From: Pocillopora damicornis
Lineage: Eukaryota
DNA length: 64,000 nt
Assembly: GCF_003704095.1 (NCBI RefSeq)
Contig: NW_020847607.1
Location: 124,001 to 188,000 of the forward strand
Direction of reading: 5' to 3'
Shown here one piece after another: positions 1 through 17,234 of this stretch (positions are counted from its first letter, which is position 1; every line of letters starts with the position of its first letter). The notes under the pieces were generated by a model. The model made no database searches, was not told the DNA's origin, and saw only the letters and a program-made list of their open reading frames with translations. Made by a program: the position numbers and the translations under genes.

Positions 1-203
1 GACTGGCAACATTCCGCCATTTTTCGCCTGCCCATGCCACCTCTTTTAAATTGGTACCCCTAACTGATGACCTGACACAGGATATGTTTGTGGAGGAAAG
101 CACATAAATTTTAAAAGAACGAGAGGGATGTTTCTCTGAAACCCAGTGGAAACAGTAAAAGTTACGAGTATGAGAAAAGTAAATAACTGTTTTTCGGTCT
201 TAC

Positions 204-3200
204 TTCTTTTCCACGTCTTCCCGGCCGACCAACTGGTCCTATCAAACCAACTTGGCCCTACGAAAAAAGATAATTGACATCAGTTTTTCGGAGTCGTCTT
301 TTCATCAACCTTTCTCTTCCTCATAACTTCTTACCTTAGATCCTCTGACTCCTATGCGGCCTCGATTCCCTGGGATACCTGGGGGACCCTGAGAAATACA
401 GAGACACGCGATTCACATCGAATAAAAATGCACTTCAGTGAAATGCAGAAAAATTCAAGATATTAATCCACGTTTTTTGAAAGATTCAAGGCTAATTCGC
501 GCACCCACCATTTAATTACATAACTTCCGTGAAGATATGTAAGACATTCGTCATATACCAGCCTGTTCTGCAGGCAGGTATATGACGAATTCTGAAGGCC
601 AGCATAAAGTAAAAACAACTTACTCGAGGTCCCCGCGGACCAGGCATTCCAGGACGACCTGGGGGTCCCTGTATCAAGAGAAAGAAAGAAAGGTAAATTA
701 TTAAATCATCAACATCATTTCATTTTCGAGTAAGTGACGCAACGGAATAAAACTAAGACCACAAAAATGAACCGAAAGTCAATGTTCATGGTCATAACCC
801 GGCAGCGATTCACTTCGATTCAGATCAAAGCGTCCCGTCCATTCCAATTTTGCCACGATCAAAAGGCATTCTAATGGCTATATTAAATCACATTGCGGTA
901 CCTGTCTAGCTTGTTGTTGTTGTCTAGGAAGGATCACCGGCGGCACAGCGGGACCTTTCTCATTCTAAGAAAAGAAAAAACAGTTTGTCTTGAATCCACC
1001 ATTTATACAGAGAACAAAATTTGTTCATAAGATCAAGTGGCCAATGTGGGTCTGTGTTTATTCTCGCTTTCTGCAGCACTAAGTTACTTCTCTGATCGCC
1101 ATACATTTTCTGAGGCGCTGACGAGGAGAATTTGTTTAACGATCAATAGCTCCTTAAGATGGTGATCATTTTCTTTATTTTCACGACCTTAATGTTTGAT
1201 TCAGGGGTGATATTGTAAGGAGAAATTAGATGCTAATCACTCTTCGGGATCAAAGGGTTAAGGCGATACTCTGATTGCTTTTATATTTTTCTAGGATATA
1301 ATTTGCTTGTTTAGGTACAATTACGCTTGAAACTTTTAGCCATGTAGTTCGTGTACAAAAAACCATCCCCTGTTTACAGTTAGCAAAATCTTCAAAATGA
1401 TTTACTCATTGAAATCACGCACAACACGATTATACCACACAGCACACCAAACAAACCTTACATTTGCAGGTCCTTTCTCCCCCTGGGGCCTCAGCGAACC
1501 TATGTTTCCCCCTCCTCCTCCACCCGGTGGTCCCGGTGGTCCCGGAGGTCCGGGAGGCCCTGATTCTCCGGCTTCTCCCTAGAAACGGGCAAAGCAACAG
1601 GAAGTGAAAAGACGGGATAGCGCGAAATTATATTTATTTTCCCTTTAAAAATAACGATTAAAACAGCAATAAGTTTCTCAATGAGAATCACCGGCTCTCC
1701 GGGGTCCCCTGGATCGCCTCTTGGTCCGGTTGGTCCCTCTGGACCCTAAAGAAATTGAAAGATGTTAATATGTAACTTCTTCTATATGTGGAATGCACTC
1801 AGTCGTAAAGTGCTTCTAAGAAATAATGCAAGACAGTTATGCTCACAGGGGAACCAGCGGGTCCGGGATCACCAGGTGGTCCAATGATCTTCAAAAACAA
1901 AGAATTTGCAAAGAATTAGGCGGCAAATAAAATATTACTGCTTATTTAAAGGAGGAAGAAAGGCAAAACAAGAAAAAACGAACCAATTTTCAACCTGTTT
2001 ATTTTAACTATTATACACTTTTTTTTTGACATGGAAGGCAGCACCCTTATCACAGAGTTACACCTTTGACACTATGTGATACTGGATTTATCGACTTCTT
2101 GATTTCCTGGCAGCAATTTGCCAGGGAATCGAGAGACCTTTCAGAGCGGCATACATGTGCAAACATGTACACTTTTAAAAGTATAGCTAAAATATTTCGG
2201 TCAATTCAAAGCCAAAAAAACATTTATATACCACTGTAACAGAATTAAGCACTCACCTGTGAACAATCGTGAAGAGCATTACAGAGGCGTTAGCGTTACT
2301 TATCGTTTTGAAACGTAACATTGACACTCTGTCTGTCACGAATTCCCAGCGAAAGATTAAAGATGAAAATCAGCAGACATTGATTCGACAGAAGAAATAC
2401 ACACTGTGTACTTACCGTTGACATTTTCTCAGCTGAAAGAGGAAAACCAGAAGGAGAGAAAATTAAAAGTCTATGTTAAAGAAAATTGATTATTCTCCTT
2501 TAAACATCGAAAGTGGACCTGAACAGACCGCAAAGTAACTGATGCGGAATGACAGCCTTACAAAAACGATGATGTACACTTCCCTTTATTGTCTACCGCT
2601 GAGAAAAAAATTTACACAGCAACTAGAGCACTCAACCTCCGTCAAGTAAGCGTGTTGTAAGAGCAAAACCATCGTAAGCAAAGCTGCCAGTCAGCAAAAA
2701 CATAATACCTATTATGAACCAATGAGAAAAGGAACAAACGAATTGCTTGAAGCGCGGGAAAACGCTTGTAACCATGTCGCGAACGGACTCAGTGTTGCAT
2801 CTGATCGGTAAAAAAAACGGAGCGAGTTTCAACGCAACTGATAGATCATGGCGAAACAAAGGGAATGCCAAGAAGGATTGTTTTTAGTGGTAAACGAAAA
2901 ATTATTCTAAACATTTGGAATATTTCTATCCTACCTCCTTCACAGACTGTGTCCGTAATTGCCCGCAAGCTGGGTCGTAAGCCGCCAGAGGTGGTCGCCA
3001 AAAACACGTTGTTTTCAGCTGGTGGCGACACCATTTGAACAAGAGTGTCCAAATCCGGGTCTTCACCGATCGCTATCACAAACAAGTCAGCAGGCATGGC
3101 TCTGATATCGATAGCGGCATCGACAGCCGCCACGGGGTCCGACAGATTTCCCGCAGTTATAAGAACGACTGTCTAAGGAGAGATATCATTTTAGTATTAA

Positions 3201-6200
3201 CCCTTCACTATCCAACAAAAATTATCAGATACTAACGACACATAGTTCCTGGCTGGTATGGCACGGCGTGTCGTTTTGTCGTCTCGTGTCGCTAGGAGAC
3301 TCACGAGACACCTTGTAGGATTTTTAGGCAAACATGTTGGGTATTGCAGTCACTTTCCCGTTATTATAGCAGTCAAGATGTTAACAGTTATAATAACTGT
3401 GGGATTTAGCGGTGGACATTCCACGAGGTGACACTTCTTCTCCACAGTTTCCAAGTGGAATTGGATTTTGGAATGTTGGTTTTGGTGGAGGAAGGAAAAC
3501 CGTTGAAACCGAAAAAAAGACCCACAGCGCTGGGACGAGAACCAAAAACAAACTCAACCCACATCTGACACCAGGTCCTCTCGCCGCTGCAGCGAGAAGT
3601 AAGGGCTCTAACGACTGCGACATCCTCGCCACCAACCTATTACAGGTATTACAAAATTGGGCACTATTGTCGAAAATCGGATACTAGAGTCTAAAATCGG
3701 AAACTAGTGTCCAACATCGCACACTATTGTCTGAAATCTAAAGTCAAACTCTGGTGTCCAAAATCAAACTCTAGAGTCCAAAATTTATAACTGAAATCGG
3801 ACACTAGTGTCTGAAATCTGACACTGGTGTCTAACATCGGACACTTGCGTCAGATACTAGTTTCCAAAATCGAACACTTAAGTCCAAAATCAGACTCTAG
3901 TCTCTACAATCGGACACTACAGTCATGTCTAAAATCGGTCACTTGTGTCCAAAATCGGACACTAGTGGCGATGGAGGAATCTAAAGTTACCTAACTGACC
4001 ACTTTTTTTCTCTTTGTCTCAACCACTTGTCTAATTGTAGACAAGGGACTTATTTGTTTCTCTGCCGTTTGTTCATAATAATTTTAAGGGAGTCATACTC
4101 ATGGCATGAGTTAGGCACCAAGAAGTATGTTAAATAAGGGTCACATCCCCTCCACCTCCCCCTCAGGACACAAACACCAGAGCATATCACCTTATTGGTT
4201 CCATTCCGTGCCCCATTTCCGTCACCATAAACTGTCTTGAACACCTCTGTCAATGCAGTGTTTGTTATCACAGCATTCCCACTCTCCAAGGCAATCTTGT
4301 CGATTTCATCCGTGATTGTTCGTTTATTGAGCACAGAGCCACTGTAGGAATCAAGCCGAGTATGAACAACTGGCGTGGTTCCATAGCTAACAATCGCCAC
4401 ATGCGTCCCTCCCTCGCGGATATCAAAAGCATTGATGAACTGCTTGCTGAAGTCTTTTACTTGCTCAAACTGTTCTTCGCCAATTCGAGCTGAATTTTCT
4501 ATCGCTATCGTCAGATCAAATTGTTTGCTGCAAACTGGCATGAACAAATTAAACAAATATGGACAATAATAAGTAATTACAATAATATCACAATAAGTTA
4601 TTACAATAATATTACAATAAGTTATTACAATAATAAGCTGCTCTTAATCAAATTAAAATATGGAAGAAAAGGTTTAAGATTTCAGCTAAAACTACGCAGA
4701 AACAAAGCTCGCGAATCACTTGCAAAAATTACTCAACCATTATGTGTTCCGTCAAAAAACCTAGTTCGATTAAATAACAACATTTCCACTTGTCTGTTAA
4801 GTATTTACACCGTTTGTCACCTTTTCCGCACTGAATTAACACTTTTCCGTGCTATACTGCCTTTCCTCTGCATGGCTTTTAGTGAAACCCGCATTTCTTA
4901 CAGCAAATCGGAATTAATCGGAATTTTGCCAGGTTTATTATTAAAGAAAGTAAAGGCCTTTAGTTCGATCTCTCGTGAGGGATTCAGACTCATCCTTTCT
5001 CCCATTTTTGTGATAACTGAATAACCTTTTTCTTCATTAAAATCAATACTTACCATTCTGTGGCTCGAGGCAAACTTGAAAGCAGCCGGTTTGCGGATCC
5101 AAACAGCACTTCGTCTCCCCAGGACAGTCCCAATCATAATTTTCCGAGAATCCACTTCCGTTTGCCGACAAGCCACAGACTATGGTCTCTTCCGGGTCTG
5201 GCTGCTCCACTTGGCACGCAAGTGGGTCTGGGGTCGCGTCAACTGCTGGACATTTTCCAGGCTTCTCTGAGAGGAAATGTCAAATAGCAGATAAACAGAC
5301 AAATCTCTGGCCACATGAAGAGTTCCGTGAAGGCATTGATGCAAAATTACTGAATAAAGACTCGCAGGGGAAATTTAATACCTACACTAACCTGTACACA
5401 TTTTTCGCGACAAATCTTCTAACACTATGGCACCCAATTGACTCGGCTCCGCGGCTCTGTAGATGAAACGACTGTCGCCTGCTAGCTTTTGAATAAAAGC
5501 CCCTGGGACGCCCCTATTTGTTCCTATGGCAACAAAGGTCACGCCCAAATCACGTAGTTTTTTTCCAGCACCCTCCAGAACTTTGAACTCCGCAGTTGGG
5601 CCACCGGAGCTTACGAAGACAAGGTATCGTGGATGTCCATGTCTAATTCCTCCTGCCAAGCTGAAAATCTCCTCTTTGGTCGTGTTCAGAGCAGCGTCCA
5701 CTCTGCGTTCAGAGTCATTGCGTTTAGCTATATTATTTATGAGGTTTTCCAGATAAATTTGGTCCCAAAATCTGCGAAAATCTGTAATTACATTTGCAGT
5801 GTTGCCATATTCAAGTAAGGAAAACCGAACCTCCGAACTTGCAAGTTGGTTGATGAATTGCTTCAGAAATCGTTTCACGTTGTTGAATTCGCTGCTGGTT
5901 GTGGCGTCGGAATTGTCCACCGCAATGGCAACATCCATTGGAACAAAGCAATCTGTTGGAATTAAAAGTACCATTTATGAAACACACAATTAATTCTGAA
6001 GCCTAGACCCCACAATAATATTTAAATTAATTCATTCCAATGGTCACCTGGGTCTACGAGTGTAAGTCAAAAGAAAGTGGGTCGAGTACATCAAATAGAG
6101 GCTCCTTGTAAAATTGTCGCAAAAAAAAACCCAGGAGTACAAAAGGCTATCTGCGAACTGTCAGGGAAATCTTACAAAACGCTGGGAAGTGACCCTCCGA

Positions 6201-14062: not shown

Positions 14063-16854
14063 ATGCGTTACACCAAACTACTTCTAATCTGCAGCGTTTT
14101 GTTCACGTCGAGAGCAGGAACGCTTGCTCAAGAAGGTATGTTATCATGGGCAGGTTTGTTTTTCTTGCACCGGAATTGAAGGACAGAAATTAACAATGTC
14201 TTCTAAGTGCATATGAACTGTAACCCGTACTGAACGTTTGCCTTCACACTGAGGACAAAATGAACGGTGACGTAAGCTGACTTAGGATCTATGTGTTTGC
14301 GCAAATGTGATCAGTTTTACAAAGCAGTTTAAATGATTGAGTCAGTGATCGATCTTCACTTGAGCCAAAAATCACTTTGAAATTCATCTCTCTTCATGGC
14401 CTTTACGTTCTTCTGAGTTTTCAACCAATTAATTTCTTTTTCGCTTGGCTTCCAACCCCTAAATGATCATTTAAATTGTTATGGCTAGACCATAGTCTGT
14501 TAGAGCAAAGCGCGTCAGATTTACACCGCATGACTTTTCGCCTCTGGAGCTGGTTCCGTTCGAAAGGGATGTGATGTTATCTTACAAACTTTTGGTTCAC
14601 TTGTCAAGTAAGTTTGACAGGTATCACGGGCATAAGTTGCTCAACACTGCTCTTCCTGAAAGCACTACATGCAAAGTTCCTAATCATTGTTCAGTCTAGG
14701 TTCGGTCCAAGATCACCATAACAAGGCTAAGAAAAATATAAAACTGATTTCTGAATGAAAAAAGAATTACTGCATTACATGATGCTTGCATTGCTTTGCA
14801 TTATTGTTGACTTAACGACTACTCTATGTAAATTAGGCCATAATGTGTGTTTTCTTCATATTCTTACTCTTGACGAACAATCTTAATTCTAATAACAACT
14901 TCTGAGTTCGTGTCAAAGTCAACAAATCGTTTTGTTTTAGAAATTCTTTGTGCGGAGCCAACAGATCTTGGAATCATTTTAGACTCATCCGATACGGCTA
15001 GCAGCAAATGGCGAGAGGTTTGTAAAGTACAATTCCTTTACCCAAAAATTCTCGCCCCAAATTGATAATCAAATACGGTTTATATAAATTATCACATTGT
15101 AAGAATTGTCTTGGTTATCTCCGTCTTATTTTTTGAGCGGCTATGAATTTTCTTTTTTTTTTTCAGAAATTTTCTGCTCTGTTTTTATTTATTCCCTTTT
15201 AAAATTTGTACAGGAAGACTAGAACAAGTAATGATGCGCCTAAGTGTTATGTCGAGCATTTCACGAAAGACTGGGCGATAACTAGTCACGTGATCGACAC
15301 TTTATAAATTGCTTTACGTCATCTACGTGCACGTTTTCTTTCGATTGTCAGGTTCTGGACTTCACCACTTCTTTGGTGGACTTTTTCAACATAGGCCGCC
15401 TAAAAAGCCATGTTGGTTTAATCACCTACAGCACAGATGCACAATTGGTTATGGACTTCAAAACTTTTGAAGGTGACCGCCTAACTCCGGAAAATGTGAA
15501 AGACCTCATCGAAAAAGTAGTGCCGACCGGAGGTGACCGCTACATTGACAAGGCGCTAAAATTGGCGAATGAAAGACTGTTTACTGCAGAGGCGGGAATG
15601 AGGGTGAATAAAAGTGACATGAAAAAGGTCTGTCAAGAAAGTCTCACGGCGCAATAATTTTACAGCAGAACCAGAAAAATAAGGCAAATTTTGCACAAGG
15701 AGTATTGAAAGCTATATCTCTATATTTCTTTTGGTACGCTTTACTAGCGATGTCAGCAAGGTCAGTGGGCTAAAAACTCTCAATCACGCGCAATAAATTA
15801 TATCCTGTTTTCCTTTCATGTCTGGTTTGAGTTATTATACTGGCTCTCTAAATTTTTCCAGAGTTTGCTGTTGCGAAAACTTCAGCCGTTGTGATCATTT
15901 TAGTCACTTAAGTTGGGTTTATCCATCTCCTTTTATAAAGATAACTCTTAAGTTATCATGAAAATTACTGCGCTATTTGAAAACGAAACATTTTAATATT
16001 TTTTTGTCGTTTTATTCACAGATTATGATTCTGTTAACCACTGGTAAACAAACAGGCCAACAAAGCAGTGTCAAGTCATTACAGGAGGCGTCTGAGCCTC
16101 TGCGAAACAAAGGAATCAAGATTTATGTTGTGGCAGTTGGGAATAAGGAAGATATCGATGAAGATGAGCTGATAGAAATTGCAGGCGCTCGAGAAAATGT
16201 TATTACCGCGGAATCATACGACCAACTTGTAAACTTGGCAGAGGAAATATCCAAAGTTGCTTGTGGTACGAAAATTGAGTTCGTCTTGAGCATAATGATA
16301 TCAAAATCGTTATAGGCCAACAAAATCTTTAGAATACACGTCTTGTCGAGTATGAGCACATTTGCGATTTTCCTGTGAAAATATAAGCTTCAAATATCAG
16401 CTAAGATTGCCAATACCTCCATAGCAACGTCTAGCCATCGAACGACGCTCTCGGTCGTGAGCTCTAGGTACGAAAATGATCGAACCCTGGACCACCTCAA
16501 TTGCGACCAGATTCTCTACATATTTTACTGATCGTCTCCTAAATTTTATTTTTGTACTTTTTTCCTCCCCTTTCTGTAGGAATAAAGCTTATGGAGGTAA
16601 GCTATCATTCATTAGATGAGTTCCTCGCAATAGATATCTGATATGGAAGGCAGCCTCTGACAACATCCAGTAACTCGTCTCATTTGACATGCGCGTTACT
16701 GGTCGTGACTTCACTAAAGGCGACCAAGAAGTCGCCAGTAGTGAAAAAAAACAATATATCATTCTAAAATCCCAAAGAACAATTAATTTGCTTATTTGCG
16801 TTCATCTGTCTCTATACATTGCGTGTTTTGCAAGTTTTGAGGTTTTAGCTCTGA
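14063..16854 (+). CDS. Gene B: small secreted single-VWA protein (helix-less; 3' end tentative)
   Basis: Exons 14063-14135 (MRYTKLLLICSVLFTSRAGTLAQE), 14941-15017 (EILCAEPTDLGIILDSSDT...), 15352-15627, 16022-16265 (IMILLTTG...KVAC), 16580-16596 (17 nt, GIKLME), and a probable terminal acceptor at 16849 giving L-stop. All phases are compatible. Confidence 0.85.
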
Positions 16855-17134
16855 CAGCTTTGGTGAAGCCTTGGTTGATAATATCCAGCAACTTTGTCAA
16901 CGGAAGTTTACTCGGTGAGTGAACAAAATAATTTTTACCTCTTGGCAGTTTCTTACTTCTCTCAGACAAAGTATTGGCCATCAAATTTATTATTCCGTCT
17001 GTGTTCCTTTTTTTCAGTATGATCTGGAAAACAAAACAACCATTTTGGCGACGTGATAGAGTGACCGCAGACCACTTGAGAATTACTGTTATCACACTGG
17101 GTCTGGGAAAGAAGACAACATTTGTTAGCCATGA

Positions 17135-17234
17135 NNNNNNNNNNNNNNNNNNNNNNNNNNNNNNNNNNNNNNNNNNNNNNNNNNNNNNNNNNNNNNNNNN
17201 NNNNNNNNNNNNNNNNNNNNNNNNNNNNNNNNNN
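17135..17234. other. Assembly gap (others: 34948-34993, 42580-42979, 57086-57149)
   Basis: Runs of N. Confidence 1.

What the first reader, a model, noticed from the sequence alone, without database searches (positions are those of the whole stretch)
1889..2432. Candidate switch exon turning collagen A into a helix-less WAP3-VWA4 protein
Seen: in the intron between the 17-nt exon and the first collagenous exon, the minus strand has a CTAAC branch motif, a pyrimidine-rich tract and CAG, then GTG AGT GCT TAA. AATAAA follows about 240 nt later, then a U-rich tract. Splicing here yields ...AEKMSTVSA-stop, i.e. the whole ~980-aa propeptide with no helix. The same junction (CAG|GTGAGT) is also a perfect regenerated donor, so it could act as a recursive splice point that decides between termination and continuing into collagen. 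Inference only; no transcript evidence.
Basis: partly seen in the sequence, partly recalled or inferred. Interest (0 to 1): 0.82.

Follow-up and report, generated by a model that had tools for sequence, protein, structure and literature searches.

The report
Conserved intronic splice motif, not exon
The suspected "switch exon" in a coral collagen gene is not used as an exon in the RNA data available; its core is a splice-donor-like motif kept across stony corals, inside an intron that is often left unspliced, together with its neighbour, around a 17-base exon.

Summary
As a bare motif it is at chance level, with 1 match in the window against 0.9 expected.

Assembled RNA from four runs shows only the path VWA exon -> 17-nt microexon -> first collagen exon. 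No 2416->2256 junction appears, and no transcript ends near 1975-1985. The intron appears only as whole-intron retention running on into the collagen exon.

Orthologous loci from at least five coral lineages keep the microexon and, 95-160 nt after it, a donor-like core G|GTRART. The pyrimidine tract, the position of the stop and the AATAAA are not kept.

Further downstream lies the only conserved non-coding block in about 11 kb of the gene (2144-2023). It is predicted to form two hairpins and is single-copy in the genome.

Transcript contigs from two other coral species have every other intron removed but keep both introns flanking the microexon. One carries a 980-aa WAP/VWA reading frame that stops inside the retained upstream intron.

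Best reading: a U1-type splicing-control module for a hard-to-splice microexon, with conserved selective intron retention. It is not a terminal exon. Recursive splicing remains untested.

The parts
2935..3172 (-). Last propeptide exon (C-terminal half of the fourth VWA domain); donor gag|gtagga, phase 1
   Evidence: Sequence; splice joints 3172->4191 and 2935->microexon in RNA contigs; matches residues 893-973 of the L016 reading frame
2433..2934 (-). Intron 1 (502 nt), retained together with intron 2 in part of the poly(A)+ RNA; read-through from the VWA exon stops at 2848-2846
   Evidence: Unspliced contigs X2 1860-2964 and X1 1860-2720; ORF 2846-3133; same retention in L016 and L023
2416..2432 (-). 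17-nt frame-essential microexon (A-E-K-M-S-T), conserved in all orthologues
   Evidence: 16 of its letters lie between the two sides of joint 1889->2935 in X1 and X2 (table 5c); conserved in 14 loci
1889..2415 (-). Intron 2 (527 nt; 527-638 nt in nine orthologues), which holds the finding
2289..2300 (-). UAAC repeats (gtaacgctaac), branch-point-like; (C)GTAAC repeats recur here in most orthologues
   Evidence: Alignments
2251..2259 (-). CAG|GTGAGT: conserved 5'-splice-site-like, U1-complementary motif; core G|GTRART kept in 9 of 9 sequences
   Evidence: the genome's own U1 starts AUACUUACCUG
2245..2247 (-).
   Evidence: Read off the alignment
2023..2144 (-). Conserved non-coding block, the only one in about 11 kb of the gene. 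Two predicted hairpins (about 2136-2095 and 2085-2039); single copy in the genome
   Evidence: conservation; structure; single copy
1998..2003 (-). AATAAA; not conserved, and RNA contigs run through it
1847..1888 (-). First collagenous exon (start of the minor helix)

Best explanation
Gene A is a cnidarian-type fibrillar collagen with a WAP/VWA N-propeptide. A conserved, frame-essential 17-nt microexon joins the propeptide to the helix. It lies 95-160 nt downstream of the microexon and is followed by a conserved block predicted to form two hairpins. I read these together as a splicing-control module for the microexon. At 17 nt the exon is too short for ordinary exon definition, and a U1 site about 100-160 nt downstream would give the spliceosome a normal-sized unit to recognise. 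Removal of the two flanking introns is slow or incomplete. A fraction of otherwise fully spliced, polyadenylated RNA therefore keeps both introns, in this species and in at least two others. Inferred: that U1 binds the motif; that the module helps or gates microexon splicing; whether retention is a by-product or a regulated step.
For: Only the canonical path was found (2935 -> 16 letters of the microexon -> 1888, at depths 75 and 56), with no joint at 2256/2257. Unspliced contigs span X2 1860-2964, X1 1860-2720 and X8 1951-2434, at depths about 7-10. Other introns are at about 0 in X2 and X8. L016 has at least 3 upstream and at least 24 downstream introns removed, yet both microexon-flanking introns remain colinear with genomic DNA over 1282 nt; L023 is similar. 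The L016 reading frame of 980 aa (WAP plus 4 VWA) stops 9 codons into retained intron 1. GGTRART sits at the aligned place in 9 of 9 sequences, with 6-10% chance each. The block at 2144-2023 is the only colinear non-coding match between the window and four distant orthologues over 11 kb, at exon-like identity of 71-77%. In the predicted structure 97% of cells are paired and 3 pairs are compensatory, reached by 5 of 500 shuffles. The genome's U1 5' end is canonical. By my count from the alignments, the motif forms 7-10 Watson-Crick pairs with it against 8 for the microexon's own donor: equal or more in every sequence except L009 (7 plus 2 wobbles). Background: exons under about 50 nt suffer steric interference between the factors at their two splice sites (review PMC8911335).
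Against: All RNA evidence is from assembled contigs, which drop rare junctions and cannot prove linkage beyond a read length. No binding or mutational data exist. Covariation in the hairpins rests on three single-lineage changes, and the structure was derived from the same sequences. The block could act at the DNA level. The retained fraction (roughly a tenth to a third by contig depth) is a rough figure. A donor-like motif this strong could also be used as a real alternative donor whose product is destroyed by nonsense-mediated decay and so stays invisible.
Confidence: 0.55

Rival explanations
1. The acceptor at 2257 is used, translation stops at TAA 2247-2245, and the transcript is cleaved after AATAAA. 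This would give a helix-less WAP/VWA protein ending ...MSTVSA.
For: All sequence elements are present in the window and in 98.5%-identical Pocillopora-like scaffolds.
Against: No 2416->2256 joint in four runs at a 1% reporting threshold. Contigs pass through 2003-1951 to 1860. The AATAAA, the stop position and the pyrimidine tract are not conserved, and L009 has TG where the AG should be. The U-rich run is more simply the pyrimidine tract of the true acceptor at 1889.
Confidence: 0.04
2. Two-step (recursive) removal of intron 2 through the AG|GT site, in either order. One order removes 2415-2257 first and regenerates a donor. The other uses the donor at 2256 first, treating microexon plus 159 nt as a 176-nt exon, and then removes 2415-2257 with the CAG acceptor. 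Both give the normal mRNA.
For: AG|GTRAGT with upstream UAAC branch-like repeats is present in 8 of 9 sequences. It would ease definition of a 17-nt exon.
Against: Recursive splicing is described for very long introns, over 24 kb (PMC8911335); this intron is 527 nt. The tract before the AG is only about 40-57% pyrimidine in most species. L009 has no AG. Neither intermediate junction (2416->2256 or 2257->1888) appears in any contig.
Confidence: 0.12
3. The motif works as a decoy site that actively promotes regulated retention of the flanking introns. Retention would then gate collagen output or yield a secreted helix-less propeptide-like protein.
For: The same two introns are retained selectively in three species. 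A cryptic splice-site motif is conserved inside the retained intron, as in the decoy-exon model (PMC6097662). The 980-aa reading frame has an intact start.
Against: Decoy exons were described mainly in retained introns over 1 kb. There is no evidence that the motif raises retention rather than lowering it. Nothing shows that the retained form is exported or translated. Retention may be a simple kinetic by-product.
Confidence: 0.18
4. The conserved block, and perhaps the motif, is a DNA-level element: an intronic transcriptional enhancer with palindromic factor sites, as known for first-intron enhancers of vertebrate collagen genes (from my own knowledge).
For: Exon-level conservation of a non-coding block. 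Both hairpins are also DNA palindromes.
Against: Three compensatory changes keep pairing. The block sits next to a conserved splice-like motif in an intron with unusual splicing behaviour.
Confidence: 0.08
5. Chance motif with no function.
For: One match in the window against 0.9 expected.
Against: It is conserved at the aligned position in 9 of 9 sequences from at least five lineages.
Confidence: 0.03

Closest known systems
Decoy exons / detained introns (Parra et al. 2018, PMC6097662)
   Same: Conserved cryptic splice-site sequence inside an intron that stays unspliced in polyadenylated RNA while neighbouring introns are removed.
   Different: Here the introns are about 0.5 kb each, not over 1 kb. 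The internal exon is a constitutive, frame-essential microexon. No junctions to a cryptic exon were seen. No functional test exists. The host is a cnidarian matrix gene.
Recursive splice sites (Drosophila ratchet points, vertebrate RS exons; review PMC8911335)
   Same: A juxtaposed AG|GTRAGT that would regenerate a donor after the first step.
   Different: The intron is 527 nt rather than tens of kb. The pyrimidine tract is not conserved. One lineage lacks the AG. No intermediate was detected.
Intronic enhancers of microexons (for example the downstream control sequence of the c-src N1 exon and SRRM4-dependent elements; from my own knowledge and PMC8911335)
   Same: Strongly conserved intronic sequence next to an exon too short for normal exon definition.
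   Different: The element is donor-like plus a structured block 95-390 nt downstream. The gene is non-neural. The exon appears constitutive.
Cnidarian fibrillar collagens with WAP/VWA N-propeptides (Hydra Hcol3 type; PMC2852846, PMC12549020)
   Same: WAP and VWA modules, then a minor helix, then a major helix built of 54/45-nt exons.
   Different: No alternative processing at the propeptide-helix boundary is mentioned in the passages I read. Nematostella is reported to lack an Hcol3-like collagen but to have a WAP/vWFA protein without a helix (PMC12549020). Whether that is related is not known.
Truncated isoforms made by intronic polyadenylation
   Different: The defining features were tested here and not met.

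Membership tests
Alternative terminal exon with intronic polyadenylation | Splice junction from the upstream donor (2416) into the candidate acceptor (2256) | tested here: not met
   No such joint in contigs of X1, X2, X7 or X8 at a 1% threshold, nor in L016 or L023. Contigs can miss rare forms.
Alternative terminal exon with intronic polyadenylation | Transcript 3' ends 10-30 nt after the AATAAA | tested here: not met
   Contigs continue past 2003-1975 to 1860 (X1, X2) or to 1951/1958 (X8, X7), with no loose A-tails listed. Contigs are poor at showing ends.
Alternative terminal exon with intronic polyadenylation | Conservation of acceptor, stop and poly(A) signal | tested here: not met
   The AATAAA is absent in L002 and all more distant loci. 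The stop position varies. The pyrimidine tract is weak.
Recursive splice site | A 3' splice site (branch, pyrimidine tract, AG) abutting GTRAGT | tested here: inconclusive
   Met in the window and L002. AG|GT is present in 8 of 9 sequences but the tract is 40-57% pyrimidine. L009 has TG|GT.
Recursive splice site | Located in a very long intron | tested here: not met
   The intron is 527 nt, and 527-638 nt in orthologues. The review gives over 24 kb (PMC8911335).
Recursive splice site | Intermediate junction, lariat or saw-tooth read profile | not testable with these tools
   Only Logan contigs were available for these runs and the single read-laying run is spent.
Retained / detained intron with decoy splice site | Intron kept in poly(A)+ RNA while the other introns of the same transcript are removed | tested here: met
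   X2 and X8 show depth 9-10 over 1860-2964 against about 0 in other introns. L016 and L023 are spliced everywhere else.
Retained / detained intron with decoy splice site | Conserved cryptic splice-site motif inside the retained intron | tested here: met
   G|GTRART in 9 of 9 sequences.
Retained / detained intron with decoy splice site | The motif is required for retention | not testable with these tools
   Needs a minigene or antisense experiment.
Microexon with intronic control element | Exon of 30 nt or less, conserved, with conserved flanking intron sequence | tested here: met
   The 17-nt exon is conserved in 14 loci. The block at 2144-2023 is the only conserved non-coding stretch.
Cnidarian WAP/VWA fibrillar collagen (Hcol3-like) | WAP and VWA modules in the N-propeptide, followed by Gly-X-Y exons of 54/45 nt | tested here: met
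   Pfam VWA on four window exons. WAP plus 4 VWA in the orthologous L016 frame. Gly-X-Y exons at 1888-203.
Cnidarian WAP/VWA fibrillar collagen (Hcol3-like) | C-terminal fibrillar collagen NC1 domain | not tested
   The 3' end of the gene lies outside the window.
Known RNA families (Rfam) | Match above the gathering score | tested here: not met
   Only a weak mir-23-like hit on the opposite strand, 23.8 bits against 52.

The most novel reading that the evidence does not exclude
Retention of the two introns around the microexon is a regulated, conserved switch in stony corals. Governed by the U1-like motif and the two-hairpin block, one fibrillar collagen gene would yield either procollagen or a secreted 980-aa WAP/VWA protein without a helix. 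That product resembles the helix-less WAP/vWFA protein reported in Nematostella.
Probability: 0.12. Interest if true: 0.7.

Novelty: new member of a known kind. Interest (0 to 1): 0.4.

Why it matters
It replaces an attractive but unsupported exon model with something testable. A 17-nt exon sits at the propeptide-helix boundary of an ancient collagen. Next to it lie the gene's only conserved non-coding element and a conserved U1-like site, and the same two introns are left unspliced in several coral species. This offers a compact natural system for asking how non-bilaterian animals splice microexons. It also allows a test of whether intron retention controls matrix collagen output, or produces a free propeptide-like protein, in reef-building corals. 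It also warns annotators that helix-less WAP/VWA gene models in cnidarians may stem from retained-intron transcripts.

Tried and rejected
- Rfam scan of 1400-3200: nothing above threshold.
- Paralogous copies of the block in the whole genome, searched by BLAST, by pattern and with a covariance model: only the locus itself.
- Alternative first exon ending at the donor-like site: read by eye, there is no in-frame ATG after the last stop, and the other frame would break Gly-X-Y. Rejected.
- U12-type introns as the cause of retention: both donors are GT-AG U2-type by sequence. Rejected.
- MicroRNA or snoRNA in the block: the stems of 12 and about 14 bp are too short for a pre-miRNA, and there are no conserved C/D or H/ACA boxes. 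Rejected as unsupported.
- Word search with the 980-aa L016 frame for other helix-less frames: one unrelated mollusc protein, uninformative.
- Exact look-ups of an intron-1 ORF and of P0019: not on record.
- P0001/L015 turned out to be an unspliced DNA contig.
- L021 from the pattern scan is a chance hit in unrelated sequence.
- The bacterial promoter/terminator scan is irrelevant for this eukaryote.
- My first pair count used a structure string shifted by one column in one helix. One search is the corrected run.
The only long frame used is the natural uninterrupted one of the fetched contig L016.
- The large representative-protein search was not used, because the question did not turn on protein identity.

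Full report
**What the window is.** The window is contig C4242:124001-188000 of a 234-Mb, 4393-contig animal genome. RNA runs that hold the stretch are labelled coral or marine metagenome, and Tara scaffolds are 98.5% identical. From my memory of its assembly size I take it for a Pocillopora stony coral; this is an inference.

Gene A runs on the minus strand. Pfam finds VWA domains in four exons. Gly-X-Y exons of 54/45 nt follow from 1888 down to 203. Cnidarian fibrillar collagens with WAP/VWA N-propeptides are a described class (PMC2852846; PMC12549020).

**The observation.**
- the 17-nt exon at 2432-2416;
- CTAAC at 2293-2289;
- a tract of about 69% pyrimidine at 2287-2260;
- CAG at 2259-2257, then GTG AGT GCT TAA at 2256-2245, in frame;
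- AATAAA at 2003-1998;
- a U-rich run at about 1979-1951;
- the collagen exon starting at 1888.

The upstream exon ends at 2935 in phase 1. As a string, CAGGTRAGT occurs once in the window against 0.9 expected, so in one genome it is at chance level.

**Transcript evidence in this species.** I laid four RNA runs from three studies on 1-6000: two poly(A), one oligo-dT and one random-primed. All are kept as assembled contigs.

The canonical path is confirmed. In X1 and X2 a joint connects 2935 to 1889 with 16 letters between, which are the microexon, at contig depths 75 and 56. All other listed joints are the expected GT-AG introns. No joint touches 2256 or 2257, although differences were reported from 1%.

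The intron is covered, but only by unspliced contigs: X2 1860-2964, X1 1860-2720, X8 1951-2434, and three pieces in X7. The ends at 1860 and 2964 are where a 31-letter word graph must branch between the spliced and unspliced forms. These contigs therefore represent retention of both introns around the microexon and run through the AATAAA into the collagen exon.

The X8 contig has 11 unlaid letters beyond 2434. By word arithmetic this fits 13 nt of the upstream exon, meaning intron 1 removed and intron 2 kept. This is my inference, since the letters were not shown.

In X2 and X8 the other introns have about zero depth (bins 401-600, 3201-4000, 4601-5000), so the retention is selective. X1 has some other intron signal. 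X7 covers introns and exons alike and is uninformative. By contig depth the retained form is roughly a tenth to a third of the spliced one, a rough figure.

**Orthologues.** Word searches with single exon ORFs and look-ups of the encoding contigs gave three groups of loci: near-identical Pocillopora-like loci (L005-L008); a closer relative (L002, exons about 80% identical); and four more distant loci (L009-L013, VWA exon 64-70% identical at the protein level). A pattern scan of JGI metagenome contigs added seven more loci.

The microexon and its donor are conserved everywhere.

| Locus or group | Sequence at the site |
|---|---|
| window | CACAG\|GTGAGTG |
| L002 | CCCAG\|GTGAGTG |
| L009 | GTGTTG\|GTGAGTA |
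| L010 group | GAACAG\|GTAAATA |
| L012 | GAAAAG\|GTAAATA |
| L013 | ACAAAG\|GTGAGTG |

The conserved thing is therefore a donor-like core, G|GTRART, 95-160 nt after the microexon donor. It is present in 9 of 9 distinct sequences, and each has a 6-10% chance of holding one in that stretch.

The tract before the AG is only about 40-57% pyrimidine in the distant species, and L009 has no AG. The in-frame stop falls anywhere from 4 to about 24 codons downstream. The AATAAA is missing already in L002. (C)GTAAC repeats upstream of the motif recur in most species.

The genome's own U1 snRNA begins AUACUUACCUG. By my count from the alignments, the motif variants make 7-10 Watson-Crick pairs with it, against 8 for the microexon's own donor: equal or more in every sequence except L009, which has 7 plus 2 wobble pairs.

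**A conserved block.** Its identity of 71-77% equals that of the exons.

RNAalifold predicts two hairpins. On nine sequences 97% of cells pair and three pairs show compensatory change, reached by 5 of 500 shuffles (one search had a mistyped structure). This is moderate support, because the structure was derived from the same sequences.

The block matches no Rfam family. It is single-copy in the genome by BLAST, by pattern and by covariance model.

**Transcript evidence in other species.** Two of the pattern hits, L016 (5769 nt) and L023 (3743 nt), are spliced RNA contigs. I compared each with genomic contigs of the same species.

L016 has at least 3 upstream and at least 24 downstream introns removed. 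It is nevertheless colinear with DNA over 1282 nt covering the last VWA exon, intron 1, the microexon, intron 2 and the first collagen exon.

L023 keeps these two introns plus the one before them, and has the next nine removed.

L016 carries a 980-aa frame from an ATG, with WAP plus four VWA domains. It maps exon by exon onto gene A and ends 9 codons into retained intron 1. The window's equivalent read-through stops at 2848-2846.

It arises by intron retention upstream of the microexon, and those transcripts continue into the collagen exons rather than ending in the intron.

**Interpretation.** The switch-exon model fails each of its defining tests that I could run. Recursive splicing fits the AG|GT core, but it is described for very long introns (PMC8911335), its acceptor features are weak in most species, and one lineage lacks the AG. 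It remains untested at read level.

The best-supported reading is a conserved U1-type intronic motif plus a structured block that serve recognition of a 17-nt exon. Exons under about 50 nt suffer steric interference between splice-site factors (PMC8911335). Removal of the two flanking introns is slow or gated.

Whether the motif helps inclusion or acts like a decoy that promotes retention (PMC6097662) cannot be told from sequence. A DNA-level enhancer role for the block is a minor rival.

**Limits.** All RNA evidence comes from assemblies. Rare junctions, true 3' ends and linkage over long distances are not shown by contigs.

Noticed in passing
window 1133-1250: RNA contig depth of 10^3-10^4 in all four runs, with many loose ends and short odd joints: an expressed repeat family sitting inside the collagen intron 1461-965.
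   Followed up: no
window 2748-2808: Contigs in X1 and X2 diverge from the window at 2748 into more than 255 other letters. Bases 2750-2808 also hit L002 elsewhere in reverse orientation. This is probably a transposon boundary or an insertion polymorphism in intron 1.
   Followed up: no
window 16265-17135 (+): Gene B also has a 17-nt microexon (16580-16596) after its last VWA exon. With the upstream exon ending in phase 1 at 16265 it reads G-I-K-L-M-E, not an immediate stop. GGTGAGTG follows at 16914-16921. A faint resemblance to the conserved block (TATCACAC ... ATTTGTTAGCC, 17090-17130) ends at the N run; the covariance model does not detect it. No Gly-X-Y exons follow on the + strand in the window.
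   Followed up: partly
window 38362-63803 (-): A second collagen gene's major helix, built of 54/45-nt Gly-X-Y exons.
   Followed up: no
window 1889-2415 and the orthologous introns in L002, L009-L013, L016, L018: The length of intron 2 is kept within 527-638 nt in nine sequences despite low sequence identity outside the block.
   Followed up: partly
window 4598: One X1 contig carries an 11-nt insertion (TATTACAATAA) in a short tandem repeat of the intron.
   Followed up: no
Literature: PMC12549020: Nematostella is reported to lack an Hcol3-like WAP/VWA collagen but to have a WAP/vWFA-repeat protein without a triple helix (NV2.11346). It is worth checking whether that model is truncated by the same kind of retained intron.
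   Followed up: no
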